This document shows, in pieces, positions 2,250-60,337 of a stretch of 64,000 bases of DNA; position 1 is the stretch's first letter; each line of letters opens with the position of its first letter. The notes under the pieces are model-generated. The model saw only the letters and a list, made by a program, of their open reading frames with translations. It was not told where the DNA came from and did not search any database. The position numbers and the translations under genes are program-made. The stretch covers positions 1 through 64,000 of the IMG/VR virus record IMGVR_UViG_3300021142_000002. One strand, 5' to 3'.

Positions 2250-2283
2250 GAGATACTAGAGTGGATGTCCACTCTAGTATCTC
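2250..2283. terminator. Intergenic palindrome, 16-bp arms, 2-nt centre
   Basis: GAGATACTAGAGTGGA-tg-TCCACTCTAGTATCTC, flanked by CATA upstream and TATG plus a T-tract downstream. Confidence 0.7.
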
Positions 2284-2299
2284 TATCTATGTTTTATTT

Positions 2300-2324
2300 T
2301 TTACAAAATTCTATGTATGGAACT
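2300..2324 (+). promoter_or_regulatory. Putative late promoter (TATG-containing), identical 25-mer copy 1
   Basis: TTTACAAAATTCTATGTATGGAACT is identical at 7315-7339, each time just upstream of the RBS of a fibre gene. phiKZ late promoters are centred on TATG. Confidence 0.6.
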
Positions 2325-2342
2325 TACTATAGGAAATCCAAT

Positions 2343-5300
2343 ATGTCTGATAATATCGACAATGATCTAATAGCTTTATCGGCTAAAACAGATCGACTGC
2401 TTGCTCTTTTTAATCAACAACACAGTACGTTTGGATCAGCAATTGCCAATTTAAATGCTAATCTAAATAGTCTGCAATTACCTGTTATACAATCTATTGA
2501 AGCTACATTAACTAACTCTATTAATACCAGAGAAGTATTAGCTAACAAAACCGATACCATTGCTAACAATGGCAATGGCACTAATTATCCATCAACAGCG
2601 GGTGTAATTAACTATGTTACATCACAGCTAGCTAGTTATGTAACTTCTAGTTCTTTAACAACTACATTATCTAGTTATGCGTCTTCTAGTGCTATTGGTA
2701 ATTTAGCTAATCTACCTAACAGTACCACTAATTTAGTAGCAGCTATTCAATATGTTAATAGCATCATTGGTAGTGGAGGCGGTAGCTTAGGTTATACTGC
2801 AGAAAATATTGCTCATAAAAATGCTAGTGATGGATATGCCGGATTAACCGGTTATAATTTAAACTTAGTTAATACAGCTAATACTTTTACCAATCAATTA
2901 ACTAATAATGCCACTGCAGCTAGAACGTTTACACTCCAGGATAAATCATACACATTAGCTGGTCTTGATGACTTAGCCAATTATCTACCACTATCTGGTG
3001 GTACTATTTCTTCTACATGGAATAGTGGGTCGACTACCTTTACTGGATTAACACTTAACTTTACAGATACTGCTAGTCAGGGTAATAGCTTAATACAAGA
3101 TTGGAGACTTAATAACTCCAGTAAAGTATCTATTAAAAAGACAGGTGATATGTTGATTAATGGCATTACTATTGGGTTAGGTAATAACCAATTATCTGGC
3201 TGCACTGCCATAGGTTATCAAAGTCTGAATTCAAATACAGGTGGTACTAATAACACAGCTATTGGCTATTCAGCTTTATCAGGCATTACCACAGGTGTGG
3301 GTAACTTAGGCGTTGGATACACAGCAGGAGCTGGTATTACCACGGGTAACTATAATGTTGTTATCGGCACTTATAATGCTACTTTAGCAGCTAGTAATAC
3401 TGTATTAATTGCTGATGGTAATAATAATGAAAAACTAAGAGTTAAAGCATCTGGGGATCTTTTATTCAATGGTATTACATTAGGTCTAGGGTTAGGTAGT
3501 GTAGCTAGTAACTTAGCTTATGGTGCCAATGCTTTAGCAGGTTATACTACAGCTACTTATAACATTGCATTTGGCAACAATGCTTTAAATGCTAATACTA
3601 CAGGTGCTGGAAACTTAGCAATCGGCTATAATAGTTTAGCGGTTAATACAACCACTAACTATAACTTAGGTATTGGTGGTTATACATTAACTTCTAACAC
3701 TAATGGTACTTATAACTTAGGGATTGGTTATAATGCCTTATATACCAATAATACAGGTAACTACAATATAGCCTTAGGTTATAATAGCCTTTATGCGAAT
3801 ACTGCGGGCTCTAGTAATATTCATTTAGGTTATTTATCAGGCGCTGCTAATTTAACGGGTAACTACAATATAGCTATTGGATATAATAGCTTAAATGCTA
3901 ATACTGCCAATAGTGGATTAGTAGCTATTGGGCATAATGCTTTAGCAGTTAGTACAACCAGTGCAGTAGCTAATACTGCTATTGGTTATCAGTCTATGCA
4001 AGCTATTACTTCAGGCTATAACAATACGGCAGTAGGTTATAATACACTAAAAACAAGTACTTCTGGCTATAATAATTCAGGCTTTGGTTATCAGGCTTTA
4101 ACACTTTTAACTACTGGTACTAATAATGCTGCTTTTGGTTATAATAGTTTATCTACCGTAACATCAGGCTCTAATAACTCAGCCTTTGGTTATAACTCAC
4201 TGGCTAAAGTCACTACCGCAGGTGGTAACACAGCGTGTGGGAATAGTGCACTGTATACTCTATCTGGCGGGTCTCAAAATAATGCCTTCGGTATGAATGC
4301 ATTAAACTTAGCTACATCAGGTGCTTATAACTGTGCATTTGGTTATAATAGTTTTCCTGCATTAACCACTGCTCAGTATAATACGGGTTATGGTAATAAT
4401 ACAGGTTTATTAGTAACTAGTGGCAATAACAATACGTTTATTGGTTATAATAGTGGATCGACCGTAACCACAGGTACTAACAACATTATTGTGGGTTATA
4501 ACTCAAATACATTAGCTGCTACCGATACCAATGAAATTATTATTGGTGTAGGATTAACTGGAGCAGGTTCTAATACAGTGACTATTGGTGGTAGTGCAAT
4601 TACGGCTACTTACCTTTATGGTTTAATTTATCCAACCAGTTATACTACATTAGCTGCACCAGCTTATGCACTGGGCTCATTATATTTTGATAGCACCTTA
4701 AATAAACTAGTATTAGGCGGTGCCACTGCTAAAGAAACAATAGCTACATATGCTGATTTAAGCAATTATGTAACCTCTAGTTCTTTAACGACCACTCTAG
4801 GTGGTTATACCACTACAGCAGCCACCGCCGCCATTAGTAATAGAGTAGCTGTATTTGAATCAAGTGGTGCATCAGCAGTTGGCGCATTATCTAGTTTAAA
4901 TAGTGCAGTCACAGGCACCTCAATAGTAGCGGCTATTAATAACTTAAATGCAATCGTTGGATCATTAGGTAGTTTAGCGACTTCCGCAACCTCTATTGTA
5001 GCTGCTATTAATAGTGTAGCTGTTGGTGGTGGTGGTACAGTAAACTTATCTAACTATGCGCTACAGGCTGATTTAACAACTGAGGTTTCTAATCGTTCTA
5101 GTGCAATATCGGCAGTTAATACTACTATTGGGTCTTTAGGTGCTTTAACAGCAGGCATTACTAATACCTCTATTGTTAATGCTATCAATAGTAACTATTC
5201 AGCCATAAATAGTAATGCTTCGGCTATTAGTGCGGAATCTAGTACTAGAACATCTGCTATTAATTCAGTTAATACAACTATTGGTGCATTAACTAGTTTA

Positions 5301-7276: not shown

Positions 7277-7308
7277 GAGCATAGAGAGGATTAATCCTCT
7301 CTATGCTC
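7277..7308. terminator. Perfect loop-less 32-bp palindrome
   Basis: GAGCATAGAGAGGATT|AATCCTCTCTATGCTC. Confidence 0.75.
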
Positions 7309-7314
7309 ATTATG

Positions 7315-7339
7315 TTTACAAAATTCTATGTATGGAACT
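7315..7339 (+). promoter_or_regulatory. Putative late promoter, identical 25-mer copy 2
   Basis: Exact copy of 2300-2324, followed by an AAGGA RBS and ATG 7359. Confidence 0.6.
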
Positions 7340-7358
7340 CTTATAAGGAACTCTAATC

Positions 7359-17409: not shown

Positions 17410-18078
17410 ATGTCAGAATATAAACAATACATCGGTGTTAAATTAGTAGAAGCTTTTGAAAGAGCAGCGACTGAAGAAGATAGACGCGGTGTACATCCAG
17501 TGGGTGCTCTAGGTTATCAGGTTAAATACCCAGATGGTTATTTATCTTGGTGCCCAAAGGTCGAGTTTGAAAAATACAATCGTCAAGTAAGTGGCTTAAC
17601 CTACGGCATGGCTAATACAGTTACTAAAGAGCATATTGATAGTATTATCATTGACGAGCAATATAGTCGCGTTATAGGTACTACTATCACTCATTGTGCC
17701 TTAACATTGCTAAACGGGTTTGTGGTAACAGGTGAATCGTCTTGTGTTGATGCTACCATTTTTAATAAAGCAATGGGTGAGAAATACGCCAGAGAAAAAG
17801 CTTATGAGAAAATATGGGAATTAGAAGGCTATCTTTTAAAACAAAAAATGTATGAGCAAAACCAAACTTATACCTTTGAAGAAGCGATTAAATTATTAGA
17901 TAGTGGAAAAACAATATCTCCTGTATCTTTTCCTAGCGTATCTTTCTTTAAAGGTATTGCTGGTCCTATCTATGGAACAGCTGCTGGCGAGGAGGCCTAC
18001 TTCATTAACAGAAATAATAAAATAGCTTTATTTAAGCTAGAAGAGTTTGTCAAAGAAGATAAGTATATCGTAGTATAA
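17410..18078 (+). CDS. Fusion protein: YIGxK N-terminal domain + N4 Gp49/Sf6 gp66 family domain + DUF2829-like C-terminal segment (candidate nucleotide-signal sponge)
   Basis: KQYIGVKLVEA...GYQVKYPDGYLSWCPKxxFEK. TVTKEHID...TxCxLTLxNGFxVTGESSCVD...FxxxxGEKYA...IWELEGYLLK. TFEEAIKLLDSGK. Confidence 0.7.
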   Translation: MSEYKQYIGVKLVEAFERAATEEDRRGVHPVGALGYQVKYPDGYLSWCPKVEFEKYNRQVSGLTYGMANTVTKEHIDSIIIDEQYSRVIGTTITHCALTLLNGFVVTGESSCVDATIFNKAMGEKYAREKAYEKIWELEGYLLKQKMYEQNQTYTFEEAIKLLDSGKTISPVSFPSVSFFKGIAGPIYGTAAGEEAYFINRNNKIALFKLEEFVKEDKYIVV

Positions 18079-18094
18079 AAACGTTCTAACAATG

Positions 18095-18139
18095 TATCAG
18101 ATGCGTTAGATACTCAAAAGGTATCTAACGCATCTGATA
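18095..18139. terminator. 19-bp inverted repeat with 7-nt loop
   Basis: TATCAGATGCGTTAGATAC-tcaaaag-GTATCTAACGCATCTGATA. Confidence 0.7.
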
Positions 18140-18158
18140 TGTTCCTAATTTAAGAGAC

Positions 18159-18800
18159 TTGATTATGAAAAAGTTAATCGGATTATTAATCCTACTGTTT
18201 AGTAGTGCTGTCTTTTCAGCACCTATACAGAAATCAATAACAACGAAGAAACAACATAGTAGTCACGTCGTATCTTTTATAAAGAATGAAAGCAAAGTGA
18301 CAGAAGTACTTTCGATCTTTAATGCCAATAAACAATACGATGATTCATTTAAACAGTCGAGTAACCAATATTCACTTGACTATCGGCTACTCAAAGTAGT
18401 CTGCACTGTAGAATCAAAACTAAAGTATGATGCAGTATCTAAAGAAGGTGCAATTGGACTTTGTCAACTTATGCCAAAGACTTGGAATAACATAAAGAAA
18501 ATCAGTAAGAAGAAATTAAATAAAATAAAAGATCCTCATCAATCTATTCATGCAGCTGCCACTTATTTTAATTATTTAGATAATTTTTGGAGAAATATAG
18601 ATAATAAAGAAAACCGCATTAAATTAGTTCTGGCGAGTTATAATGCTGGGGAAGGTAATATATCCAGATCTAAGAAAAAATGTCGTAGTGGCGATTACAG
18701 AGCGATTATGGGGTGTTTAAAGAGCTTTACTAGTAAGAAATCTGAAGAAACTAAAAATTATGTAGATTTAGTAATGAGTAGTTATTATAGGGTGATTTAA
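18159..18800 (+). CDS. Lytic transglycosylase (SLT domain) with N-terminal signal peptide
   Basis: Catalytic VES, AVSxxGAIGLCQLMPxT, ASYNAGEG and ETxNYV motifs. N-terminal MKKLIGLLILLFSSAVFS-A. Confidence 0.85.
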   Translation: MIMKKLIGLLILLFSSAVFSAPIQKSITTKKQHSSHVVSFIKNESKVTEVLSIFNANKQYDDSFKQSSNQYSLDYRLLKVVCTVESKLKYDAVSKEGAIGLCQLMPKTWNNIKKISKKKLNKIKDPHQSIHAAATYFNYLDNFWRNIDNKENRIKLVLASYNAGEGNISRSKKKCRSGDYRAIMGCLKSFTSKKSEETKNYVDLVMSSYYRVI

Positions 18801-18823
18801 AACAAAAAAAAAACGAGCATAAT

Positions 18824-18853
18824 CCATACAGTGATCCTAGGATCACTGTATGG
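18824..18853. terminator. Perfect loop-less 30-bp palindrome between convergent genes
   Basis: CCATACAGTGATCCT|AGGATCACTGTATGG, A-tract and CATA on the left, TATGTTT on the right. Confidence 0.8.
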
Positions 18854-18861
18854 TACTATGT

Positions 18862-19467
18862 TTACTTTAAGTTATAATTAAAATCTCTAGCAATCATATT
18901 TTCTGACTCCATTAGTTCCTCTGAACTATGGGGCAATTTAAGTAAGTTACAATCTTCTGTAATCCACACTTCATTCTGCCCAATAGATAAATCACGATAT
19001 ACTGTGGTAACCCAATATCTAACATTGATGGTATTAAGACCCACTTCCAAAACAGGTTCAGCAATACGAACTAGCTGGCGTTCATTTTCTTCATATGCTA
19101 ATTCACTGTTTTTAAATCTAATGTATTTATTAGTATCAATAGTTATTATACCTTTAGTTTCAATATTAACTTCAGGTTCAGCGCTAACTGTCTTTGGCCC
19201 ATTTGTTAATTTAGCCTTTAAAGTAGATTTCAATTTTTCATATAAATCTTTTTGTTCCTTATCAGTGATGAGCTCTAGCGCATCTTCATGGACTATCAGT
19301 TCCAAAGAAAACATTTCTTCATTTGTACAAGAATGTCCATGGGTTAATGTAATCGTGGTATGCACTCTGCATGACTTATCAGCTTTTTCTTCAACTAATC
19401 CTGGAATAATACCATAAACACAATGGTAATATTTAACCTTTGATAATTCTTTAATTATTTTTGCCAT
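18862..19467 (-). CDS. Hypothetical protein
   Basis: 201-aa ORF with a strong AAGGAG RBS. Confidence 0.6.
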   Translation of the reverse strand: MAKIIKELSKVKYYHCVYGIIPGLVEEKADKSCRVHTTITLTHGHSCTNEEMFSLELIVHEDALELITDKEQKDLYEKLKSTLKAKLTNGPKTVSAEPEVNIETKGIITIDTNKYIRFKNSELAYEENERQLVRIAEPVLEVGLNTINVRYWVTTVYRDLSIGQNEVWITEDCNLLKLPHSSEELMESENMIARDFNYNLK

Positions 19468-19553
19468 TTTCTTTCTCCTTTAAATTTTAAACGGTTTTAA
19501 TTCAATTTCATACTGCCTTACACTATCTAACTTTAATAATTTCTTGATTATTA

Positions 19554-20267
19554 TCATTTTATCTTCTTGATTAAATTCTTCCAGTTATCTGTTTTCACAG
19601 GTTCCTTAACCGGCTTAGTTTTATTATACAGTCTTGGAAAAGAATTTCTACTAACTGAAACTTGATAACCATCCCAGGTTGTGATAACCTCTTTATATCC
19701 AGCGTTAATAGATGAGCCTTGAGAATAGCTACTGTAGGAGTCTATTGTGACAATAACTGGTTGATAATAATTGGCATATAAACTAAGAGTATTCATCACT
19801 CCTTTTACTCTATTTAATTCAAGAGGATTAGCAAGGTAATACATTGCTTTAACAAACCCTAATGCTTTAAAGGGATCATTAATTATATACTCTTCAGAAT
19901 CAGATTTTTTAAAAAAAGAATACTGCTTTAACCTAAAGTACCTATTGGATAATAGGTTATTTGCAAACCCAATATACAGCTCAGCAAATCTTTCTGCGTC
20001 AATATCATCTTCAACAAAATAGAAATCCGGAGGCGGCATATCTTTAACAGTCTGTCTTGTTTTGAGTCTATGAATATTTAATAGACCATTTTCAACATCG
20101 TGTTTGTTTAACGATATCATAAAGGGCAACAGTTTTGTTTCATAAAGAGAATTCGGATAATCTTCTTTGCTGATAAATAGAGTTTTATTGGTTAGTGTAG
20201 CAGGCTCTTCCAACATTAACTTTGTTATTCGACTACTCATTGTGCTGAGTTCACTGGCTGTCGGCAT
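19554..20267 (-). CDS. Hypothetical protein
   Basis: 237-aa ORF overlapping the upstream gene in an operon. Confidence 0.6.
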   Translation of the reverse strand: MPTASELSTMSSRITKLMLEEPATLTNKTLFISKEDYPNSLYETKLLPFMISLNKHDVENGLLNIHRLKTRQTVKDMPPPDFYFVEDDIDAERFAELYIGFANNLLSNRYFRLKQYSFFKKSDSEEYIINDPFKALGFVKAMYYLANPLELNRVKGVMNTLSLYANYYQPVIVTIDSYSSYSQGSSINAGYKEVITTWDGYQVSVSRNSFPRLYNKTKPVKEPVKTDNWKNLIKKIK

Positions 20268-20781
20268 GAGTATCTAGCTCCAATCTTCTACCACTTGCTT
20301 TAATTCGTTTAGCAGCATTTACTAAATCTTGAATACCGTTGGAGTGTTCAAAGGCATTATCAAACATCCCAACATTTCCACTTTCAATCATACAGTTTGT
20401 CATAATCTTAATTAAATCTTCTTTATGACTTTCAAAGGGTTTACAAAATGTTATTTCTACTTCCAATGATGCATTACTTACCCTATCAAAGGTTGTGACT
20501 AGATAGGTATTCTTTCTAACCTTTTTATTAAAGTCTACTTTAAAGGTAAACAATTGCATTCCATTGTCTATACTATCAAAGGATAAAACCTTTATTATAT
20601 AGACATTGGGTTCAATATACTCTCTATCAGTAATATACCCAACCCACTCAGACTGATATACTCCACCACCTGCCATTACAAATACTGTTCTAGAATGGTC
20701 CTGGTTTGGCAATATAGAATGTATCCATTTAAATAATTTATTATATAGTTTAATTCTTAATTCATTAATTTTTTCTTTCAT
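20251..20781 (-). CDS. Hypothetical protein
   Basis: ORF in the same operon; probable start MKEKINEL. Confidence 0.55.
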   Translation of the reverse strand: MKEKINELRIKLYNKLFKWIHSILPNQDHSRTVFVMAGGGVYQSEWVGYITDREYIEPNVYIIKVLSFDSIDNGMQLFTFKVDFNKKVRKNTYLVTTFDRVSNASLEVEITFCKPFESHKEDLIKIMTNCMIESGNVGMFDNAFEHSNGIQDLVNAAKRIKASGRRLELDTHADSQ

Positions 20782-20971
20782 CTTTATTTCCACTTAAGTT
20801 TTGTTTAATAGTTTCTTCAAGAACATCATTTAAACATTCATTGCAATAAAGTCGTTTACCTTTCTTTTTACCCACTGGAGTATGTTCATTTAATACTCTA
20901 CCAGCTTTTCTACATTTTTGACATTCTCCTATTATATATCCTCCATTAAGATATAGTATTTTCTTTGCCAT
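20765..20971 (-). CDS. Small CxxC...CxxC zinc-ribbon-like protein
   Basis: MAKKILY start after GGAG; CQKC and CNEC pairs. Confidence 0.55.
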   Translation of the reverse strand: MAKKILYLNGGYIIGECQKCRKAGRVLNEHTPVGKKKGKRLYCNECLNDVLEETIKQNLSGNKDERKN

Positions 20972-20999
20972 AAATTTACTCCAATATACTAACATCTAT

Positions 21000-21012
21000 T
21001 AGATAATGTATA
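21000..21012 (-). promoter_or_regulatory. Putative early promoter motif TATACATTATCTA
   Basis: Exact motif also at 36645 and 42063, with variants at 24315, 25280, 43214 and 47917, always shortly upstream of a minus-strand gene. Confidence 0.65.
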
Positions 21013-21019
21013 GATAAAA

Positions 21020-21051
21020 AATACTAGAGTATCCTAGGATACTCTAGTATT
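21020..21051. terminator. Perfect loop-less 32-bp palindrome
   Basis: AATACTAGAGTATCCT|AGGATACTCTAGTATT. Confidence 0.75.
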
Positions 21052-21061
21052 AATAGTCTCT

Positions 21062-21310
21062 TTATTTCTTTTTCATTTCTTCTTCATATACTTTCAAAGG
21101 TGCTGGATGCAAAGTAAATGAACTAAACCATTTACTAAGTGGTCTAGACCAATAGGTATTATCCTTTAATCGTCTATAGACTACAGTGGCTGGATATTCT
21201 TCCTGTCTTTCTGCCTCTAAGTTAGTTACTACAATAACCTGATAAATGTTATTAGTCTTTAAATGTATCCAATAACTCTCTTTATTAGGAATGATTTTAA
21301 AACTTACCAT
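21062..21310 (-). CDS. DUF1653-like protein
   Basis: YWxHxKxxxxYxV...E...VVYRR...WSRPLxxWF pattern. Confidence 0.6.
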   Translation of the reverse strand: MVSFKIIPNKESYWIHLKTNNIYQVIVVTNLEAERQEEYPATVVYRRLKDNTYWSRPLSKWFSSFTLHPAPLKVYEEEMKKK

Positions 21311-23429
21311 AATAGCCTTCTTTTAAAGCATCAAATAAATTAGCAGCAGAATGCAATTCATTATCATATTCTATTTCTTCATTACCCTTTACCTCTACTA
21401 TGCTACCATCTTCCAATGTAAACTGATAAATAGTATTTTCTAAATCAGATTCTTTTACTAAAACGCCTTGAAAAACTTCAGGGTTAAATCTAAAAGTAGC
21501 AGTTCCTTTAAGCCCACTATCATAGCCGTATATATAAACCTTTTTAAAGTCTTCAAAGGGATAATCAGTAGGTACATTCACTGTTTTAGATATAGATGAG
21601 TCAATCCATTTTTGTGCAGCAGCTTGAATATTAACATGCTGCTCTATAGTAATAGTTTCAGATGAGATAAAATAATCTGGCAATTTCTCTTCTTCTTTTT
21701 CACTGTAGGGTATTGCATTAGGATTAATCAATTCTCTATAAGCTAATAACTCATAAGAGAATACATCTACTTTCTCTTTAGTCTTCTTACCCTCTCTAAT
21801 AATGTTTCTAGAATAGTGATGTGCAAAGCTAGGCTCAATACCATTGGATACATTATTGGCTAATGATAAGGATATAGTGCCAGTAGGTGCAATTGAGCTA
21901 TGATGGGTAAAACGACAACCATATCTTTCTATTTCTCTTCTAAAGACTGGTCCTAATTCATCAAATATTTTTGCCATATAAACACTTTTACTGAATAAAT
22001 ATTTTCCAGGAACTTGTTTACCGACTTTAGACCCATTTAAAATAGAAGGATTCTTATTAGCCATGCCCTCTGTAATGGTAAACATTTTATCCATTATAGG
22101 CGCTGCACCTTTCTCTTTAGCTAATTCTAACCCTACTTCAAATCCAGTTACTGCCATGATTTTAGTTACCTGTTCAGTAAAGTAAATAGATTCATCACTG
22201 CCGTAGACTTTACCTAACATAGCTATTGTGGAGCCTAATCCTAAATAACCCATACCATGTCTTCTCTTTTGTTCTAATTCATAACGTTGTTGTGCTAACG
22301 GCAATCCATTAATCTCAACGACATTATCAATCATTCGTGTGAATATTCTAACTACTTCAGTATACTTATCAAAGTCAAATCTTGCATTTTCAGTAAAAGG
22401 ATTAGTAATAAACTTAGTTAAATTAATAGATCCAAGCAAACAAGAACCATATGGCGGAAGCGGCTGTTCATTGCAGGGATTAGTGGATCTAATGTTTTCA
22501 CAAAACCAATTGTTATTCATTTCATTGACTCTATCTATTAAGATAAAGCCAGGCTCTGCATAGTCATAGGTAGATGACATAATGACATCCCATAATCTTT
22601 TAGCAGAAATTGTTTTATAGATTCTACAAGCTACAAAACCTTTATCATTAGTAATATAGTTTTCAGTAACTGGGAATTCTCTATATTTAATAATGGTTGG
22701 ATCAGTTAAGTCAAATTGATTGAGCTCTTGTTCCTTTAGAGTAATAGGGAAAGATAATGGCCAGTCTTTATCTTCTTTAACAGCATTAATGAATTCATTA
22801 GTAATTAGAATAGAAAGATTAAATTGTCTTAATCTACCATCTTCTTTTTTAGCTTTAACAAATTCTAAGATATCTGGATGGTGTATATCAAAAGTACCCA
22901 TTTGAGCACCGCGTCTACCACCGGCTGATGATACTGTAAAACACATTTTATCGTAGATGTCCATAAAGGATAATGGACCAGAGGTATAAGCACCAGCACC
23001 AGCAACGAATGAATCTCTGGGTCTAAGTGTAGAAAACTCATAACCAATACCGCAGCCAGCCTTTAGTGTTAAACCGGCCTCATGGAGCTTAGCAAGAATA
23101 CTATCCATAGAGTCATTAATAGTATCCGATACTGTACAGTTAATTAAAGAAGTAGCAGGTTTATATTGCTCTGCTCCAGCATTGGACATAATACGACCAG
23201 CTGGGATTGCACCGTTTTGTAGAGCCCATAGAAACTTATTATAGCAGTGTTCTCTTAACGATTCATGTTCTACATTAGCGAGTGCTCTAGCGACCCTTTT
23301 AAAAGAGTCTTCCATAGTCTCATCAATGATATTTCCATTGTTATCTTTTAATCTATATTTTTTATCCCAGATATCATAAGAGGCAGGTTGTACTGGAATA
23401 ATAGTTTCGTTATTAATAGATTGAGTCAT
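21297..23429 (-). CDS. nrdJ: Adenosylcobalamin-dependent (class II) ribonucleotide reductase, NrdJa-type subunit
   Basis: IPAGRI, SLINCTVS, GCGIGYEFSTLRP, GGRRGAQM, TNPCxEQPLPPYGSCLLGS, SIAPTGTIS and IDSSISKTVN motifs. Ends LFDALKEGYYGKF as in proteobacterial NrdJa. Start MTQS after AAGGA. Confidence 0.92.
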   Translation of the reverse strand: MTQSINNETIIPVQPASYDIWDKKYRLKDNNGNIIDETMEDSFKRVARALANVEHESLREHCYNKFLWALQNGAIPAGRIMSNAGAEQYKPATSLINCTVSDTINDSMDSILAKLHEAGLTLKAGCGIGYEFSTLRPRDSFVAGAGAYTSGPLSFMDIYDKMCFTVSSAGGRRGAQMGTFDIHHPDILEFVKAKKEDGRLRQFNLSILITNEFINAVKEDKDWPLSFPITLKEQELNQFDLTDPTIIKYREFPVTENYITNDKGFVACRIYKTISAKRLWDVIMSSTYDYAEPGFILIDRVNEMNNNWFCENIRSTNPCNEQPLPPYGSCLLGSINLTKFITNPFTENARFDFDKYTEVVRIFTRMIDNVVEINGLPLAQQRYELEQKRRHGMGYLGLGSTIAMLGKVYGSDESIYFTEQVTKIMAVTGFEVGLELAKEKGAAPIMDKMFTITEGMANKNPSILNGSKVGKQVPGKYLFSKSVYMAKIFDELGPVFRREIERYGCRFTHHSSIAPTGTISLSLANNVSNGIEPSFAHHYSRNIIREGKKTKEKVDVFSYELLAYRELINPNAIPYSEKEEEKLPDYFISSETITIEQHVNIQAAAQKWIDSSISKTVNVPTDYPFEDFKKVYIYGYDSGLKGTATFRFNPEVFQGVLVKESDLENTIYQFTLEDGSIVEVKGNEEIEYDNELHSAANLFDALKEGYYGKF

Positions 23430-23521
23430 TATTAATATTTCCTTTTGTGTTATTAGTGAAGACAAATGATAGGAATTAGGACTATAAATTTATTGAAAAA
23501 AAAAAGAATAATAAAGATAGG

Positions 23522-23550
23522 TAGATAGACTCCCTTAGGGAGTCTATCTA
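23522..23550. terminator. Palindrome, 14-bp arms, 1-nt centre
   Basis: TAGATAGACTCCCT-t-AGGGAGTCTATCTA. Confidence 0.7.
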
Positions 23551-23717: not shown

Positions 23718-23743
23718 TCCTGTCTCCTAAAAAAAAATATAAA

Positions 23744-23765
23744 GTGGGAGGTTTTACCCTCCCAC
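23744..23765 (-). terminator. Conventional intrinsic terminator
   Basis: GTGGGAGG-6nt-CCTCCCAC followed on the minus strand by a T-tract. Confidence 0.7.
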
Positions 23766-23777
23766 CAACACGATGGA

Positions 23778-24373: not shown

Positions 24374-24407
24374 TAGATAGAGTAGGGTATATACCCTACT
24401 CTATCTA
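24374..24407. terminator. Perfect loop-less 34-bp palindrome
   Basis: TAGATAGAGTAGGGTAT|ATACCCTACTCTATCTA. Confidence 0.75.
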
Positions 24408-24412
24408 ATTAG

Positions 24413-25310: not shown

Positions 25311-25344
25311 AGTGAGTATAGTAGCCTAGGCTACTATACTCACT
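25311..25344. terminator. Perfect loop-less 34-bp palindrome
   Basis: AGTGAGTATAGTAGCCT|AGGCTACTATACTCACT directly after the portal stop codon. Confidence 0.75.
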
Positions 25345-31973: not shown

Positions 31974-32007
31974 AGATAGTGCATGGCCAATTGGCCATGC
32001 ACTATCT
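31974..32007. terminator. Perfect loop-less 34-bp palindrome between convergent genes
   Basis: AGATAGTGCATGGCCAA|TTGGCCATGCACTATCT then TATGTTC and a T-tract. Confidence 0.8.
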
Positions 32008-36767: not shown

Positions 36768-36799
36768 TAGATACACAGAGCCTAGGCTCTGTGTATCTA
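36768..36799. terminator. Perfect loop-less 32-bp palindrome after the capsid gene
   Basis: TAGATACACAGAGCCT|AGGCTCTGTGTATCTA. Confidence 0.75.
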
Positions 36800-36839: not shown

Positions 36840-39185
36840 TTAGTAATGCATGATACCATTAGTTGGATTGTTTACTGGAGCTTGTGAGTTGTAAGAAGGT
36901 ACATTGTTGGTAGCTGTTAAACCAGCATTAGTAACTAATGTTGGGTACAGAGTATTCAAGTTCAATACGTCCAAACGACCTAAGATAGGCAGAGTAACAT
37001 AAGAATTACAACGTGGAACAGTATGGATTTCTTGTACTGTACGACCATTTCTGTTAATAGCCACATCATAGGTAATAGGTGGAGTAATTAACATTCTACC
37101 AAAATCTAATGGATGGATTTCTTCACCACCACCAGCTCTACGGAAAGAGATGTAGAGTTTAGACAATGAGTTAGTAGCATCATGAAAGAAATTGTTATTT
37201 GATTTAGTAATGAAATAACGACGACCATCACCGAATGTACGAGTATCGCCTGATTCCATGAAATGTGGAGCCAGTTTAGGATCAGTTGCTAAAATGATAT
37301 CAAATGCATCAATGTCACCTAGTGTCATTTCCAGAGCAGCTAAGTAATGAGATTGAGTCAACATTTGGTTTACCATGTTAGTAACCGTTGCAATCAATTG
37401 ACCTCTTAAGTTATCCAACGCATCTTTAGAGTTCATTGTAGTAACTGCCTGTGCAACATCTAATTGGTTATAGATGTAAGTAGGTGTTACAAACTCTGCA
37501 CCCATGAAAGGTGAATTGTAGTTCATTGTAGAAAGTGTAGTACCATTAATTTGTGATAATACAATTTCAGCATTTGCCAATGCTTGAACAGCACGACCAT
37601 TGTTTCTGATCTTAGCACCATAGCCTAAACCTTCCAGTGTAACATTGTTAGGTGCGCCAATTGGAGCTTGAGAAATAATAGGTGCTTGCAAGTTTACAGG
37701 GAAACGATACATGATCATTGTGTTAGAATCAATGATAGTACCATTTTGACGTAAGTTGCTGTTAGTACGACGAGCGAGGGGTTGATAGCCTAATGGCGTT
37801 ACAGTAAATGCACTGCCTGTTGCAGCTAATAATGGGTTAGATGCAGATAGAGCTGGAACATTAACGTCATAAACCAAAGTACCGGTTGGATCAAAGATTT
37901 GCGCAATACTTGCACCTGCCGCATCGACACGAACATTACCACGTTCAATGTTAGCACGAGCTGATAAGTTAACATTCAATACAATTTGGAAATTGCTAGA
38001 ACCAGAAATATTTAATGCTGCTAAAATATCAGTGACCATGTTAGTTGGACTAACAGTAAGCGCGCCTGAAGCAACTGGAGTCAATGCATAAGTGCTTAAG
38101 TTTTGGTCAAAGCTAAGAGCGGCTACCATGGTAGTTTGATACTCTTGACCTAAGCCTTGGTTCACTTGTGATAATACAGCGCCCAATTGACCAGAAATAT
38201 CAGTTGCAATAATAGCATTGGTTGTTCTAGTACCATTATTAAATGTTAACTGAGTATAAACAGTACCGATATTGATAATGTTATCCAGAGAGTCAGTTTC
38301 ATCCAATACGCCTGCTGCAAATAAAGAAGAGGCATATGAAAGAACTAATACGTCGGCTGAAGTACCAAACAAAATTGGTAAAGTATTAATAGAGTTGCCA
38401 TTAATGTTTCTTGACATAACTGGAACTTTAGTAGCAGGTACTAAAGCAGTTAAGTTAGTAGAAACATCAGAGTTAGGAACAATAGAAGTCGCTTCAGATT
38501 CCAAAATAGATGGATCTAACAATGCTTGGATCAAACTAGTTTTAGTCAATCTGTAAGCAGAAGGACTTGACAAGTTGTGCGCTGTAGTACTAAAGATTTT
38601 AGGAATAGTAATTTGTACATCCACACCGTTTTGACCGGCTGGTACAATTTGTTGTGGAAACCAAACTTCTTCAAAACTACCAGAGATTGCTGCTTGAGCA
38701 TTTGCAATAGCAGTTGCTGGCAGGTATTTTTGCACTGAAATAGGATCAAATGATTCTAAACCAATACCGGTTTGATCACCGTCTGCAGGCGATACAGTAA
38801 CACCTTTACCACCTTCCAATGGAACGATAGAACGATTAGCTTCAGTGTAAGCCCTAGCTGCTTCTTTAGAATAAAGAATAGAGTAAGCTGCTGATTCCAA
38901 TGCTGCATTTAAACGCATAGGATTCATATCTTTGTATTTAGCGCCACCTAACAGTTTGCATAATGAATCACAACCTTTTAATTCATTAACCAGCATGTCT
39001 TTTTTAGACATTGCCATGCCGTATTCAGAGTCATTTAAAGTTTCTAGTCCGATAAACTGATTAGCGGTCTCAGCATTAACGTAGTTACTTCCACCCTGTG
39101 CAATAACTGCTGCTACTTCATTTACTGCAGCAGTGTGTAATTCTCTCTCTGGAGAACCACCATTAGCCTGTATTCTTCTGATCAT
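36840..39185 (-). CDS. Major capsid protein (phiKZ gp120-like)
   Basis: FEExWFP, DETDSLD, GYxPxARRTNSNLRQxG, TDP...GDTRTFG and PRxxxxVxLPILG motifs. GLE/ALE maturation sites in the propeptide. Biased codon use; synteny with DnaB. Confidence 0.85.
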   Translation of the reverse strand: MIRRIQANGGSPERELHTAAVNEVAAVIAQGGSNYVNAETANQFIGLETLNDSEYGMAMSKKDMLVNELKGCDSLCKLLGGAKYKDMNPMRLNAALESAAYSILYSKEAARAYTEANRSIVPLEGGKGVTVSPADGDQTGIGLESFDPISVQKYLPATAIANAQAAISGSFEEVWFPQQIVPAGQNGVDVQITIPKIFSTTAHNLSSPSAYRLTKTSLIQALLDPSILESEATSIVPNSDVSTNLTALVPATKVPVMSRNINGNSINTLPILFGTSADVLVLSYASSLFAAGVLDETDSLDNIINIGTVYTQLTFNNGTRTTNAIIATDISGQLGAVLSQVNQGLGQEYQTTMVAALSFDQNLSTYALTPVASGALTVSPTNMVTDILAALNISGSSNFQIVLNVNLSARANIERGNVRVDAAGASIAQIFDPTGTLVYDVNVPALSASNPLLAATGSAFTVTPLGYQPLARRTNSNLRQNGTIIDSNTMIMYRFPVNLQAPIISQAPIGAPNNVTLEGLGYGAKIRNNGRAVQALANAEIVLSQINGTTLSTMNYNSPFMGAEFVTPTYIYNQLDVAQAVTTMNSKDALDNLRGQLIATVTNMVNQMLTQSHYLAALEMTLGDIDAFDIILATDPKLAPHFMESGDTRTFGDGRRYFITKSNNNFFHDATNSLSKLYISFRRAGGGEEIHPLDFGRMLITPPITYDVAINRNGRTVQEIHTVPRCNSYVTLPILGRLDVLNLNTLYPTLVTNAGLTATNNVPSYNSQAPVNNPTNGIMHY

Positions 39186-41273: not shown

Positions 41274-41307
41274 GAGTAGAGATAGAGCCTAGGCTCTATC
41301 TCTACTC
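41274..41307. terminator. Perfect loop-less 34-bp palindrome between convergent genes
   Basis: GAGTAGAGATAGAGCCT|AGGCTCTATCTCTACTC. Confidence 0.8.
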
Positions 41308-42031: not shown

Positions 42032-42062
42032 TGTTTCTCCTATAAATGATATTGATATCATT

Positions 42063-42075
42063 TAGATAATGTATA
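42063..42075 (-). promoter_or_regulatory. Putative early promoter TATACATTATCTA
   Basis: Exact motif 32 nt upstream of ATG 42031. Confidence 0.65.
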
Positions 42076-42115: not shown

Positions 42116-42143
42116 TTGTAGACTAGCCTAAGCTAGTCTACAA
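42116..42143. terminator. Near-perfect palindrome (centre CCTAAG)
   Basis: TTGTAGACTAGC-ctaa-GCTAGTCTACAA. Confidence 0.65.
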
Positions 42144-42451: not shown

Positions 42452-42483
42452 AGATAGAGTGGGGCATATGCCCTACTCTATCT
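42452..42483. terminator. 32-bp palindrome with one mismatch
   Basis: AGATAGAGTgGGGCAT|ATGCCCtACTCTATCT. Confidence 0.7.
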
Positions 42484-43181: not shown

Positions 43182-43215
43182 TAATTGGAATAATCACTAG
43201 TGATTATTCCAATTA
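43182..43215. repeat. Perfect loop-less 34-bp palindrome overlapping an early-promoter motif
   Basis: TAATTGGAATAATCACT|AGTGATTATTCCAATTA. Confidence 0.75.
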
Positions 43216-46101: not shown

Positions 46102-46128
46102 GAGGGTATAGAATTATTCTATACCCTC
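46102..46128. terminator. Palindrome, 13-bp arms, 1-nt centre
   Basis: GAGGGTATAGAAT-t-ATTCTATACCCTC; T-tract on the minus strand. Confidence 0.7.
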
Positions 46129-54297: not shown

Positions 54298-54327
54298 ATA
54301 CCACTCAGGATTAATCCTGAGTGGTAT
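54298..54327. terminator. Perfect loop-less 30-bp palindrome
   Basis: ATACCACTCAGGATT|AATCCTGAGTGGTAT, flanked by ACATA and TATGT. Confidence 0.75.
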
Positions 54328-58428: not shown

Positions 58429-58460
58429 GGAGTAATAGGTCTATATAGACCTATTACTCC
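58429..58460. terminator. Perfect loop-less 32-bp palindrome
   Basis: GGAGTAATAGGTCTAT|ATAGACCTATTACTCC. Confidence 0.75.
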
Positions 58461-58477: not shown

Positions 58478-59821
58478 TTATTCTTCTTTTCCAGCTTTTT
58501 CAACTTTTAAATTCTTCAATGATTTAGAAGCATAGTTATAAGCTGCTTTTGCAGAAGCCAATCCTTGTTTATGCAGTGAAAGGTCTGGTTCCATCAAAGA
58601 GAAAGATAAATTTTTAGATCCATATAAAACTTCTTTCATGTATTTATAGGGCTCAGATTTAGCTGATGGATCATTATGGCCAATTACGTCCAAACGTTCT
58701 TCCATGTTATAAATTTCATTTATAATTGTTTTTCTTTCAGTAATATTTAACTTGCTTTCTTTAATGGCTTTTGCCAATTCGGCAACTTCTCTTGCGATTT
58801 CAGCAACTTCGCCCGCATCCAATGCTTTAACTGCTGAAGCAACTTTAGGAAGTGATACACCTTCTGGTGTTCCAGTATAAACTTCTGCGCACCAAAAAAC
58901 ACTATGCCATCCAAGAAATTCAGCTTTTACAACAGTTTCACCCAAGAAGACTTCATTACTTTCTAATTTAACTTCATCTTCACCTGATTTAACTTCTTTC
59001 ATTTTAATAGGTGATGCTGAGCTATATTTTTTAGCCCAAGCCTCTGGGGAACCAATACCTTTAAGATCTTTAATATCTGGTTCTTTACCAACTTTCATTG
59101 CTGCTACTTTACCACAAAACTCTTTAATGATTTTGCAAGAAGCATTTTCAGTACCTAATTTATTAATAACTGTGGTCAAAGCTTTTAAACCAGCTGGTAG
59201 TGCAGCCACTGCGCCATTAGAAACTAAGTTACGGAATTCAGTTTTAGAAATTGATAACTCTTCTTTTTGCATTTTACCAACACGGCCAGAAGCTTTACCA
59301 GCTAATGCTAAAGCACCAGTTTGCAGGCGAGCAGCTTCAGCTTTATGACCTTCCCAGAATTCACCAATTTTAGTGATCCATGTTTTTACCATGGTAGTAA
59401 TTTTGGACCAGGCAGATTTAATAGAATCGCTAATGCCTTCAATTGCAATAGAGGTTGCAGCGACATTATCAATATCATCTTCTAAAGACTCAAGGCCTGC
59501 CGCAGTAGTATCAACTTTAATGAAATTGCCAGCAGTTGTTTTAATGGCAAAAGCTGCAAAAGTAGCTGCTTGTTTGCTAAGACCACCATCTTCTAATGAT
59601 TTAATCATTAATTCTTTAATGGATTCTAAACCTTCAGCAACTTCTTCAACGCGTTCTACTGCTTCTTCAACAACATCGGCATCTGAACTTTCTTCAATTT
59701 CTTCTTCTTCATACTCAGGAATAGGCTCACCTACTTCTTCAGGACCTTGCCCTTCCATTGCATTTACTTCTTCCATTAATTCTTCTAAACCAGCTCTATA
59801 ACCATATATTCTTCTTGACAT
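58478..59821 (-). CDS. Internal head protein (phiKZ gp93-97 paralog family)
   Basis: MSRRIYGYRAGLEE start; EGLE/S, AGLE/S and AIE/G sites; codon use resembles that of the capsid gene. Confidence 0.72.
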   Translation of the reverse strand: MSRRIYGYRAGLEELMEEVNAMEGQGPEEVGEPIPEYEEEEIEESSDADVVEEAVERVEEVAEGLESIKELMIKSLEDGGLSKQAATFAAFAIKTTAGNFIKVDTTAAGLESLEDDIDNVAATSIAIEGISDSIKSAWSKITTMVKTWITKIGEFWEGHKAEAARLQTGALALAGKASGRVGKMQKEELSISKTEFRNLVSNGAVAALPAGLKALTTVINKLGTENASCKIIKEFCGKVAAMKVGKEPDIKDLKGIGSPEAWAKKYSSASPIKMKEVKSGEDEVKLESNEVFLGETVVKAEFLGWHSVFWCAEVYTGTPEGVSLPKVASAVKALDAGEVAEIAREVAELAKAIKESKLNITERKTIINEIYNMEERLDVIGHNDPSAKSEPYKYMKEVLYGSKNLSFSLMEPDLSLHKQGLASAKAAYNYASKSLKNLKVEKAGKEE

Positions 59822-59895
59822 AATTGTATTCCTATTTAAATAGTGTAAATTTTAATTAATTAATTAGTATCTAATAGATACATAGAATTAGAAAG

Positions 59896-60299
59896 TTATT
59901 TTCTTTCTATGCTTTGATAAAACCTTTGCTTCCTAATCCAGAAGTAGCAAGATGAAATGGTCCACCAACTTTCATTTATTCAATAACTGCTGATCCTTTT
60001 TTGACCTCATCAATAAACTTAATATAATCTAATCTATTTTTTTATTTCAAACTTATTGTTAAACTTTATATTAAGCTGTAACCAACACATATTACCGTTT
60101 TCATCATGAGAAATTTCAGCAGGTTTTTCATTTTGTTACCATACCAAAACCATTCATATTTTTTTTTATTGTCTCATAATCACTCTCATTAAAATTTGTT
60201 TTTTCTTTAATTTCTTTAATATAAGTTAATTGACTTTTCCCAAAAATTAAAATTAAAGTCTTATTTAAAGATTCAGGCTTTTCTTCAGTAAGGGCAAAT
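59896..60299 (-). pseudogene. Decayed coding fragment
   Basis: Protein-like reading (FALTEEKPESLNK.../EKPAEISHDENGNMCW.../RLDYIKFIDEVKKGSAVIE*MKVGGPFHLATSGLGSKGFIKA*) broken by two frameshifts and in-frame stops. Confidence 0.35.
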
Positions 60300-60305
60300 A
60301 AAATA

Positions 60306-60337
60306 TAGAGAGATAGTCTATATAGATTATCTCTCTA
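60306..60337. terminator. 32-bp palindrome with one mismatch
   Basis: TAGAGAGATAgTCTAT|ATAGAtTATCTCTCTA. Confidence 0.7.

What the first reader, a model, noticed from the sequence alone, without database searches (positions are those of the whole stretch)
2250..60337. Family of fixed-length, loop-less intergenic palindromes with a T|A dyad centre
Seen in sequence: about 17 intergenic palindromes of 27-34 bp. Eleven are perfect through the centre (starts 7277, 18824, 21020, 24374, 25311, 31974, 36768, 41274, 43182, 54298, 58429). Three have one mismatch (42116, 42452, 60306) and three have a 1-2 nt centre (2250, 23522, 46102). Arm sequences differ but share architecture: 30-34 bp in the perfect ones, a purine-rich left arm (often AGATAG/TAGAG), and centres CCTAGG x5, AGGATTAATCCT x2 and TATATA x3. 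The axis is T|A in 10 of the 11 perfect ones. Many are flanked by CATA...TATG. Established: hairpin terminators at gene boundaries are normal in phiKZ-like phages, but an RNA hairpin needs a loop of at least 3 nt and does not require that loop to be self-complementary. Inference: something acts on DNA-level dyad symmetry or on an identical hairpin on both strands. Candidates are a strand-symmetric signal for the phage RNAPs, cruciforms cut by the encoded RuvC, or binding sites for genome organisation or RNA processing/export. A mutational process that symmetrises hairpins is the alternative.
Basis: partly seen in the sequence, partly recalled or inferred. Interest (0 to 1): 0.78.

Follow-up and report, generated by a model that had tools for sequence, protein, structure and literature searches.

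The report
Loop-less palindromic terminators of a jumbo phage
The 17 palindromes are real and almost certainly mark where this giant phage's genes stop being transcribed, but most of them are exactly symmetrical through a T|A centre, which no folded hairpin needs, so some process acting on the DNA itself probably writes that symmetry.

Summary
All 17 palindromes are at the stated coordinates. The whole 220-kb genome (a phiKZ-like jumbo phage from freshwater metagenomes) has 38 loop-less palindromes; simulated genomes give none with arms of 12 or more.

They start about 10 nt after stop codons. Across four related genomes, strong hairpins occupy 76% of convergent, 27% of co-oriented and 11% of divergent gene junctions. 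A T-rich tail follows, often TATG. This matches the published phiKZ terminator (hairpin plus TTAT(G/T)), so they are intrinsic terminators, with longer AT-rich stems.

The odd part is also real. The central 4 nt are self-complementary in 57-85% of strong even-centred hairpins in four related genomes, against 7-8% by chance. The dyad is T|A in 77 of 95. Controls give 0-21%: phiKZ, SPN3US, Vibrio Yong XC31, phiR1-37, AR9 and an unrelated AT-rich jumbo phage; TTCG loops recur in three of them.

RNA folding energy does not favour these centres. Orthologues keep the symmetry through paired changes, even at would-be loop positions.

My best reading is terminators whose centres are kept symmetric by arm-to-arm DNA copying (template switching). 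That step is inferred, not shown. The RuvC-cruciform idea is not supported.

The parts
2250..2283 (.). 34-bp palindrome; 16-nt arms around a non-complementary TG centre; between co-oriented + genes; TATG 5 nt downstream
7277..7308 (.). Perfect 32-bp palindrome, centre ATT|AAT, 14 nt after the stop codon of the 1685-aa ORF, followed by ATTATGTTT
   Evidence: RNA fold -25 kcal/mol, z = -5.0
18095..18139 (+).
18824..18853 (.). Perfect 30-bp palindrome, centre CCT|AGG, at a convergent junction; CATAAT on the left and ACTATG on the right
21020..21051 (.). Perfect 32-bp palindrome, centre CCT|AGG, between co-oriented - genes, with a T-run on the transcribed strand
23522..23550 (.). 29-bp odd palindrome (CCCT-T-AGGG): a T|A palindrome with one extra T
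24374..24407 (.). Perfect 34-bp palindrome, centre TAT|ATA; on the - strand it is followed by TTCTATG and a T9 run
   Evidence: (z = -7.1)
25311..25344 (.). Perfect 34-bp palindrome, centre CCT|AGG, 8 nt after the stop codon of the 847-aa virion protein gene
31974..32007 (.). Perfect 34-bp palindrome, centre CAA|TTG (the one A|T axis in the window), at a convergent junction, 1 nt after a stop codon
   Evidence: called terminator-like on both strands
36768..36799 (.). Perfect 32-bp palindrome, centre CCT|AGG, downstream of the major head protein gene; the flanking A-run and T-run extend the stem
   Evidence: (z = -6.7)
41274..41307 (.). Perfect 34-bp palindrome, centre CCT|AGG, at a convergent junction after the DnaB-like helicase gene, followed by TATG
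   Evidence: z = -6.5 on + and -5.7 on -
42043..42064 (.). Small 22-bp hairpin (loop TG) over a start codon. In lake strain X10, three linked changes make it a perfect T|A palindrome
42116..42143 (.). 28-bp palindrome, one substitution from perfect (centre CCTAAG)
42452..42483 (.). 32-bp palindrome, centre CAT|ATG, with one G.T mismatch at stem pair 7; TATG and a T-run on the - strand
43182..43215 (.). Perfect 34-bp palindrome, centre ACT|AGT, after the 926-aa helicase gene
46102..46128 (.). 27-bp odd palindrome (GAAT-T-ATTC), followed by a T10 run on the - strand
54298..54327 (.). Perfect 30-bp palindrome, centre ATT|AAT; TATG directly at the edge on the - strand
58429..58460 (.). Perfect 32-bp palindrome, centre TAT|ATA; ACTATG on the - strand
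60306..60337 (.). 32-bp palindrome, centre TAT|ATA, with one G.T mismatch at stem pair 6

Best explanation
Layer 1: what they are (confidence about 0.85). They are the factor-independent transcription terminators of a phiKZ-like jumbo phage. Each is a 14-17-bp RNA hairpin of about -21 to -27 kcal/mol that starts about 10 nt after a stop codon. A U-rich tail follows, and it often begins (U)UAUG, the tail of the mapped phiKZ terminators. TATG is also the phiKZ late-promoter start motif. Each element therefore probably ends one transcript and may let the next one start, and it can act from either strand.

Layer 2: why they have no loop (confidence about 0.35-0.4; inferred). In an RNA hairpin the central 4 nt cannot pair. 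In a DNA hairpin the central 2 nt cannot. Folding therefore cannot select for their complementarity, and independent half-site recognition by a protein dimer is excluded by the data. The symmetry is best explained by DNA copying across the dyad. In this model a strand switch at the central TA step copies one arm from the other. This would be a variant of quasipalindrome template switching, peculiar to this phage lineage. It makes or remakes exact even-length palindromes. Selection then keeps the stems. The centre decays by single substitutions or 1-nt indels, or drifts towards one-way loops such as GNRA. That drift would be slowest at convergent junctions, where a loop that improves one strand worsens the other.
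For: Terminator identity:
- Over four related genomes, strong hairpins occupy 35 of 46 convergent, 114 of 424 co-oriented and 5 of 46 divergent junctions.
- The palindromes begin a median of about 10 nt after the upstream stop codon.
- T makes up 50-60% of the 20 nt downstream. TATG is enriched 5.5-fold just downstream.
- The published phiKZ terminator motif is a hairpin plus TTAT(G/T), n = 61 (PMC10914365). I saw the same in phiKZ 1-50 kb, including CATAA-hairpin-TTATG at convergent genes.
- An independent terminator scan puts the palindromes at the top of its list: 20 sites found against 8.6 +/- 2.7 in shuffles.
- Fold z-scores are -5 to -7.
- Stems covary between orthologues in G003 and G004, which share 80% nucleotide identity. 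By my hand count from the alignments there are 22 compensated changes against 1-2 uncompensated.

The centre:
- It is self-complementary in 36/48, 29/41, 8/14 and 23/27 hairpins, against 7-8% by chance.
- In the controls: phiKZ 1/10, Yong 0/9 and phiR1-37 0/10 by the same centre test (stems of at least 7 pairs); SPN3US 0/17 and AR9 2/24 loop-less among hairpins with arms of 9 or more; G001 6/29.
- Even centres far outnumber odd ones in the clade (48:5, 41:2, 14:0, 27:3). In control G001 the ratio is 29:23.
- The dyad is T|A 77, A|T 16, C|G + G|C 2.
- When position +/-1 is complementary, position +/-2 is symmetric in 96 of 102. This excludes independent half-sites.
- The real centres are of average or poor predicted RNA stability.
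- One orthologue pair changed its centre from GTT|AAC to GAT|ATC, a paired change inside the would-be loop. In another pair four of the five innermost base pairs changed on both sides and stayed complementary, while the outer arm stayed homologous.
- Some orthologous hairpins are wholly replaced although the genomes are 80% identical.
- Paralogues differ by 1-nt indels at the dyad.
- Strain X10 carries three linked changes in 16 nt that make a 22-bp hairpin perfect.
- The transition share of compensated changes (15 of 22) equals the genome background of 57%. There is no excess of changes that could pass through a G.U intermediate.
- The trait-bearing genomes form one major-head-protein clade (support 100/99) that excludes Yong XC31 and SPN3US.
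- Template switching that perfects quasipalindromes is established, first in phage T4 rIIB (PMC7202029).
Against: - No RNA 3' ends could be mapped, because no RNA run was listed. Termination itself is therefore inferred.
- The classical intramolecular template switch perfects stems, not loop positions. A switch exactly at the dyad is my extrapolation.
- Availability of microhomology does not explain the T|A preference. CTAG is the commonest centre (14), while AGCT, TGCA and AATT are more frequent in the genome but rare or absent at centres. An unidentified specificity or some selection is therefore needed.
- Perfect centres are commoner at convergent junctions (p = 0.029). This fits selection for strand symmetry at least as well.
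- Strong selection in huge phage populations could also give paired changes without visible intermediates.
- No lineage-specific enzyme was identified.
Confidence: 0.45

Rival explanations
1. Selection for a strand-symmetric signal. With a 4-bp promoter motif (TATG), phage RNA polymerases may start on either strand, so every gene boundary must stop polymerases from both sides with an identical hairpin. A self-complementary loop is the only loop that reads the same on both strands.
For: Perfect palindromes make up 27 of 35 hairpins at convergent junctions against 63 of 114 at co-oriented ones (Fisher p = 0.029). Outward-facing TATG is on the right side at 10 of 14 convergent sites and on both sides at 4. 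On the upstream side of co-oriented sites it is enriched 2.8-fold. Convergent sites carry an A-run on one side and a T-run on the other.
Against: Any hairpin stem is already identical on both strands, and no known termination mechanism reads loop complementarity. More than half of the hairpins at co-oriented junctions are perfect although they lack the upstream A-run. The paired change at position +/-2 has no reader in an RNA tetraloop. The real loops are not the stable ones. phiKZ and SPN3US manage bidirectional sites with ordinary loops.
Confidence: 0.2
2. A DNA hairpin or cruciform function. The palindromes would extrude from supercoiled DNA with a minimal TA loop. They would then serve as RuvC cutting sites, as sinks for supercoiling, or as N4-like hairpin elements that help the phage RNA polymerase open the adjacent TATG.
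For: Only DNA mini-loops could pair position +/-2 (my knowledge of DNA hairpin NMR work; not tested here). TpA is the most easily opened step, which would explain T|A being preferred over A|T. The palindrome covers about -5 to -37 relative to the G of TATG (PMC4666361, PMC12809450). A RuvC-like gene lies at 31055-31603.
Against: Palindromes are rarest at divergent junctions (5 of 46), where negative supercoils collect, and commonest at convergent ones, where positive supercoils oppose extrusion. The RuvC is a core gene with matches in 246 phage records, including SPN3US and phiKZ-like phages; sampled stretches of SPN3US and phiKZ lack the trait. No HU/IHF or GyrA-type topoisomerase gene was found in the four genomes. 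The commonest centre, CCTAGG, is not AT-rich. TATG is also part of the phiKZ terminator tail, where the loops are ordinary.
Confidence: 0.12
3. Mobile or copy-spread regulatory cassettes of the T4 PeSL or REP kind. The palindromes would spread with their flanks by recombination and mark the edges of shuffled gene modules.
For: There are paralogous copies with shared flanks of 25-51 nt: the CTCTAGGATAGC copies at 71659 and 190095 in this genome (plus a third copy of the arm at 150040), identical copies in G003, G004 and G005, and a 152-nt repeat around one. Gene-content differences between G003 and G004 sit next to palindromes. One 18-mer core recurs in an unrelated 224-kb phage.
Against: Most arms are unique. 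No Y1/RAYT transposase was found. Spread by copying does not explain exact symmetry at the centre or the T|A axis. One or two chance hits to an 18-mer are my own rough expectation for that collection; its size was not checked.
Confidence: 0.08
4. An RNA-level role beyond termination. The hairpins would be processing sites, as under the Mimivirus 'hairpin rule' (cut by an RNase III-like enzyme). Alternatively, the self-complementary loops would let transcripts pair loop-to-loop or form dimers.
For: The same general picture holds as in giant viruses: sequence-variable palindromes at the 3' ends of genes in an AT-rich virus with its own multisubunit RNA polymerase and its own compartment (PMC4402537). 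An intermolecular duplex is one of the few things that would 'read' an exact centre.
Against: No RNase III domain was found in the genome. Four-nucleotide loops are poor kissing partners. There is no polyadenylation machinery and no RNA data.
Confidence: 0.05

Closest known systems
phiKZ conserved intrinsic terminator motif (Putzeys et al. 2024, PMC10914365; also 201phi2-1, PMC11512511)
   Same: A hairpin just after the stop codon, followed by TTAT(G/T) and then T-rich sequence. At convergent genes the form is CATAA-hairpin-TTATG. The virus group is the same (phiKZ-type major head protein, two phage RNA polymerases).
   Different: phiKZ stems are 7-11 bp and GC-rich, with ordinary 4-6-nt loops, often TTCG. 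Here the stems are 14-17 bp and AT-rich, and in most cases the centre is exactly self-complementary around T|A.
Canonical bacterial Rho-independent and bidirectional terminators
   Same: A stable hairpin plus a U-rich tail. There is an A-run upstream at convergent sites, and enrichment after stop codons.
   Different: The U-run is often set back behind UAUG. The stems are unusually long. Loops of 4-5 nt with no complementarity are the rule in bacteria (PMC13155455).
Mimivirus/Megavirus 'hairpin rule' (PMC4402537)
   Same: Intergenic palindromes define transcript 3' ends and are conserved in structure, not sequence. The virus is AT-rich and has its own transcription machinery.
   Different: There the hairpin is cut by a viral RNase III-like enzyme and the RNA is polyadenylated. 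No RNase III gene is present here.
Quasipalindrome template-switch mutagenesis (Ripley 1982; Lovett lab, PMC7202029)
   Same: A replication error makes imperfect inverted repeats perfect, often by several linked changes at once. It was first seen in phage T4.
   Different: It is known as a sporadic mutational hotspot acting on stems. Here it would have to act genome-wide, through the dyad, with a T|A preference, and in one phage lineage only.
T4-type PeSL promoter-terminator cassettes (PMC2839356, PMC4122927)
   Same: A composite stem-loop-plus-promoter unit at gene boundaries. Some copies share flanks and lie next to gene-content differences.
   Different: PeSLs are conserved in sequence and are not exact palindromes. 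Here the arms differ from site to site.
Phage N4 virion RNA polymerase hairpin promoters
   Same: This is the precedent for a phage RNA polymerase that uses an extruded DNA hairpin.
   Different: N4 hairpins have 5-7-bp stems, 3-nt loops and conserved sequence, and lie upstream of early genes (my knowledge). The elements here follow stop codons and are scarce at divergent junctions.

Membership tests
phiKZ-type intrinsic terminator | Stable stem-loop in the 3' untranslated region just after a gene | tested here: met
   Median distance from the stop codon is about 10 nt. Fold z-scores are -5 to -7. Junction occupancy is convergent 76%, co-oriented 27%, divergent 11%.
phiKZ-type intrinsic terminator | Hairpin followed by a TTAT(G/T) / U-rich tail | tested here: met
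   TATG lies within about 5 nt downstream at 16 of 45 co-oriented sites, against a 6.4% background. T is 50-60% over positions +1 to +20. The same tail is seen in phiKZ.
phiKZ-type intrinsic terminator | GC-rich stem of 7-8 bp with a 4-nt loop (consensus CCYCCCC-HWWD-GGGRRGG) | tested here: not met
   Stems are 14-17 bp and AT-rich, and 38 of 78 hairpins have zero spacer.
phiKZ-type intrinsic terminator | Transcript 3' ends map at the element | not testable with these tools
   No RNA run was listed for this genome.
Mimivirus hairpin rule | Virus-encoded RNase III-like enzyme that cuts the hairpin | tested here: not met
   PF00636 has no match in G000, while it rings in 8 of the 14 control genomes.
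Mimivirus hairpin rule | Sequence-variable palindromes at gene 3' ends | tested here: met
REP/BIME elements with a RAYT transposase | Conserved repeat sequence and a Y1 (RAYT) transposase gene | tested here: not met
   The arms differ between sites. PF01797 is absent from G000, G003, G004 and G005.
Quasipalindrome template-switch hotspot | Clustered, linked changes that raise or keep the complementarity of an inverted repeat | tested here: inconclusive
   Strain X10 has three linked changes at 42046, 42054 and 42061. Orthologues show symmetric centre changes. Coverage was too thin and haplotypes were not phased genome-wide.
N4-type DNA hairpin promoter / functional cruciform | Placement where negative supercoiling and initiation occur (upstream of genes, divergent junctions) | tested here: not met
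   Only 5 of 46 divergent junctions carry a strong hairpin, against 35 of 46 convergent ones.
N4-type DNA hairpin promoter / functional cruciform | Extrusion in supercoiled DNA | not testable with these tools
   This needs nuclease or 2-D gel probing of clones.
Known RNA families (Rfam) | Match at the gathering score | tested here: not met
   No match in the 64-kb window.

The most novel reading that the evidence does not exclude
One lineage of phiKZ-like (by inference nucleus-forming) jumbo phages has machinery that reads or writes exact dyad symmetry at nearly every gene boundary. Either its terminators are continually rewritten by a strand switch at a central TpA step, which would make them the first genome-wide 'self-symmetrising' regulatory elements. 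Or the DNA form (a minimal-loop hairpin or cruciform) is itself the working signal for the phage's non-canonical RNA polymerases.
Probability: 0.3. Interest if true: 0.8.

Novelty: new variant of a known kind. Interest (0 to 1): 0.6.

Why it matters
Terminators are normally explained entirely by RNA folding. Here a whole clade of phiKZ-like phages keeps a property, exact symmetry through a T|A centre, that RNA folding cannot see. Standard controls, including phiKZ itself, lack it.

If a DNA copying process writes this symmetry, it is a clean natural system for studying template switching at palindromes, a process linked to genome instability from bacteria to cancer.

If the symmetry is selected, it points to an unknown step in how the phage multisubunit RNA polymerases stop or start. 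Promoter and terminator recognition by these enzymes is still poorly understood.

In practice, the rule (stop codon, a 30-34-bp T|A palindrome, then a TAT(G)/T-rich tail) marks operon ends and gives a simple signature for recognising this uncultured clade in metagenomes.

Tried and rejected
- RNA evidence: no RNA run was listed, so 3' ends could not be mapped.
- Population variation: the one read-laying run gave only thin, fragmented contig coverage. No family palindrome showed a listed variant; only the small hairpin at 42043-42064 did.
- Close relatives: the major-head-protein searches in IMG/VR and JGI contigs found only the same genome again (100% identical).
- An 18-mer palindrome core searched in IMG/VR hit two unrelated contigs. 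This is not evidence of kinship.
- Rfam: no match.
- Candidate partner genes: RNase III, HU/IHF, GyrA-type topoisomerase and Y1 transposase are all absent. RuvC is present but is a core gene.
- RNA thermodynamics as the cause of the centre: rejected.
- Restriction-site logic: CCTAGG is not avoided elsewhere (25 in the genome, 13 of them at centres), and the centres are too varied.
- A dimeric protein reading two independent half-sites: rejected, because position +/-2 is symmetric in about 94% of sites.
- A generic AT-richness effect: rejected using phiR1-37, AR9 and G001.
- Origin by inverted duplication of local sequence: I looked for one-armed orthologues between G003 and G004 and found none that were clear. 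Inconclusive.
- Transition/transversion test for evolution through G.U intermediates: 15:7 against a 57% background, p = 0.39. No power.
- Assembly artefact: rejected. The elements recur in several sequencing runs and in four related genomes.

Full report
**What the window is.** The window is the first 64 kb of a single 220,366-bp contig with GC 33.4%. Its proteins match phiKZ-type families: major head protein phrog_3231, virion protein phrog_3004, a DnaB-like helicase and a RuvC-like resolvase. The nearest cultured relatives share only about 32% identity in the major head protein; they are the Vibrio 'Yong' phages. Only freshwater and lake metagenome DNA runs hold the sequence. It is therefore an uncultured phiKZ-like jumbo phage.

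**The observation.**
- Genome-wide there are 38 zero-spacer palindromes with arms of 10 or more, most with arms of 15-19. A further 40 hairpins have spacers of 1-8 nt and the same total span.
- Twenty Markov-1 simulated genomes gave essentially nothing with arm 12 or more.

**What they are.**
- I called ORFs crudely and classified sites. Over this genome and three relatives, strong hairpins occupy 35 of 46 convergent junctions, 114 of 424 co-oriented ones and 5 of 46 divergent ones.
- They begin a median of about 10 nt after the upstream stop codon.
- Read in the direction of transcription, they are followed by T-rich sequence (50-60% T over 20 nt). This often begins TATG (16 of 45 co-oriented sites, against 6.4% background).
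- Convergent sites have an A-run on one side and a T-run on the other, and several carry CATA...TATG.
- The terminators mapped by ONT-cappable-seq in phiKZ share a motif of hairpin plus TTAT(G/T) (PMC10914365). In phiKZ 1-50 kb I see GC-rich 8-11-bp stems with ordinary loops, then (T)TATG, and CATAA...TTATG at convergent genes.
- TATG is also the phiKZ late-promoter motif, with G as the start site (PMC4666361; PMC12809450).
- A generic terminator scan ranks the palindromes first. Their RNA folds are 14-15-bp stems with 4-nt loops and z-scores of -5 to -7. Rfam has no match.
- I conclude that these are the phage's intrinsic terminators of the phiKZ architecture, with long AT-rich stems.

**Is the missing loop real and special?**
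- I defined hairpins only by pairs 3-12 from an even centre and then inspected the central 4 nt.
- These are self-complementary in 36 of 48 hairpins (this genome), 29 of 41 (G003), 8 of 14 (G004) and 23 of 27 (G005). Chance is 7-8% (p from 1e-6 to 2e-30).
- G003, G004 and G005 are metagenomic relatives with 32-49% major-head-protein identity, fetched whole.
- Controls: by the same centre test with stems of at least 7 pairs, phiKZ gives 1/10, Vibrio Yong XC31 0/9 and phiR1-37 (GC 32%) 0/10. Among hairpins with arms of 9 or more, SPN3US has 0/17 loop-less and AR9 (GC 27%) 2/24. An unrelated AT-rich 224-kb phage, G001, gives 6/29 by the strict test.
- In phiKZ, SPN3US and Yong XC31 the TTCG tetraloop recurs.
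- Even centres outnumber odd ones about 10:1 in the clade, against about 1:1 in G001.
- The trait-bearing genomes form one supported major-head-protein clade that excludes Yong XC31 and SPN3US.

**The centre in detail.**
- The dyad is T|A in 77 palindromes, A|T in 16 and C|G or G|C in 2. Composition would predict roughly 40:40:20.
- The centre 4-mers are CTAG, ATAT and TTAA. CTAG leads in this genome although AGCT, TGCA and AATT are commoner genome-wide.
- When position +/-1 is complementary, position +/-2 is symmetric in 96 of 102 cases. Two independent protein half-sites would not give this.
- I replaced the central 4 nt of four elements by all 256 tetramers. The real centres rank 60th to 249th for predicted stability.
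- RNA thermodynamics therefore does not explain the centre.

**Evolution.**
- G003 and G004 are collinear and about 80% identical.
- Orthologous hairpins keep perfect pairing through 22 compensated changes, against 1-2 uncompensated (my hand count from the alignments).
- One pair changed its centre from GTT|AAC to GAT|ATC, a paired change at would-be loop positions.
- In another pair four of the five innermost base pairs changed on both sides and stayed complementary, while the outer arm remained homologous.
- Two orthologous sites carry unrelated palindromes. One GAAA-loop hairpin is conserved as such.
- In this genome the CTCTAGGATAGC element occurs three times and differs by 1-nt indels at the dyad. 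Odd palindromes read like T|A palindromes with one extra T.
- A lake strain (X10) carries three linked changes that turn the 22-bp hairpin at 42043-42064 into a perfect T|A palindrome.
- The transition share of compensated changes (15 of 22) matches the 57% background. There is no sign of evolution through G.U intermediates, but the test has little power.

**Mechanism.**
- In an RNA hairpin the central 4 nt are the loop. In DNA at least the central 2 nt are. Intramolecular folding therefore cannot demand that they be complementary.
- What can read or write them is copying of one arm from the other across the dyad, pairing between two molecules, or birth as an inverted duplication.
- I rank copying first. 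Template switching that perfects quasipalindromes is established and was first seen in phage T4 (PMC7202029). It also fits the dominance of even centres, the one-step decay products, the wholesale replacements and the linked changes.
- Weaknesses: the classical switch corrects stems rather than loop positions; the T|A and CTAG preferences need an unidentified specificity; and perfect centres are commoner at convergent junctions (27 of 35 against 63 of 114, p = 0.029), which equally suits selection for strand symmetry.
- A born-perfect model can absorb that last point, because one-way loop optimisation is blocked where both strands are used. I hold layer 2 at about 0.35-0.4.

**Rivals.**
- The RuvC-cruciform idea fares badly. 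The RuvC is a core gene with matches in 246 phage records, including SPN3US and phiKZ-like phages. The palindromes avoid divergent junctions and favour convergent ones, the opposite of what supercoil-driven extrusion predicts. No HU/IHF or GyrA-type topoisomerase gene is present.
- The Mimivirus-like processing idea lacks an RNase III (PMC4402537).
- A REP/RAYT-like origin lacks the transposase.
- A PeSL-like cassette role (PMC2839356, PMC4122927) may add to the picture, since some copies share flanks. It does not explain the centre.

**Novelty.** Terminators of this architecture are known. A large survey notes that viral inverted repeats favour spacers of 0 or 4 (PMC13155455). I found no description of a phiKZ-like lineage whose terminators are predominantly exact T|A-centred palindromes, nor of paired change at loop positions. 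I class this as a new variant of a known kind, of moderate to high interest, because it makes a DNA-level symmetrising or symmetry-reading process directly testable.

Noticed in passing
whole genome G000 (window included): Several 6-bp palindromes are strongly avoided: ATCGAT 2 observed against 24 expected, GGATCC 7 against 29, GCTAGC 11 against 28, GGTACC 20 against 51. This looks like restriction-site avoidance and may hint at the host's defence systems.
   Followed up: no
window 42043-42064: In a 2020 lake metagenome strain (X10), three linked changes (42046 A>T, 42054 G>A, 42061 T>A) turn a 22-bp hairpin over a start codon into a perfect T|A palindrome. ATG would become TTG.
   Followed up: partly
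window 18001-38000: Sigma-70-like promoter matches are fewer than in shuffles (69 against 94.5 +/- 9.4). This fits transcription that does not depend on the host RNA polymerase.
   Followed up: no
window 2284-2330 and 7309-7340; window 24320-24372 with G000 159547 and 190095: Repeats of 25-51 nt flank several palindromes; for example, a sequence containing TTACAAAATTCTA follows both 2250 and 7277. They may be shared promoters or 5' leaders of paralogous genes.
   Followed up: partly
G000 189477-189508 (outside the window): A hairpin with an 11-nt stem and a C10 loop lies directly beside the perfect palindrome at 189438. A homopolymer loop of this kind could vary in length.
   Followed up: no
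G000 89936-90004 and 139096-139153 (outside the window): Two back-to-back 34-nt hairpins with 6-nt loops, and the longest inverted repeat of the genome (23-nt arms, 12-nt loop). These are different in kind from the loop-less family.
   Followed up: no
L010 (Vibrio Yong XC31), L044 (SPN3US), L004 (phiKZ): Terminator loops in these cultured phiKZ-like phages repeatedly use the hyperstable TTCG tetraloop (CGAA on the other strand). The contrast with the uncultured clade is sharp.
   Followed up: yes
G003 75040-75260 against G004 35900-36760: Where G003 has a single perfect palindrome, G004 has a two-gene convergent module with its own near-perfect palindrome (one T.G pair). Gene gain or loss happens right at these elements.
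   Followed up: partly
L013 / G001 (IMG/VR contig, 223,708 bp, GC 30%): A complete jumbo phage with terminal repeats and no phiKZ-type head protein carries the same AGATAGAGCCT|AGGCTCTATCT palindrome core at a convergent junction. Its other hairpins mostly have ordinary loops.
   Followed up: partly
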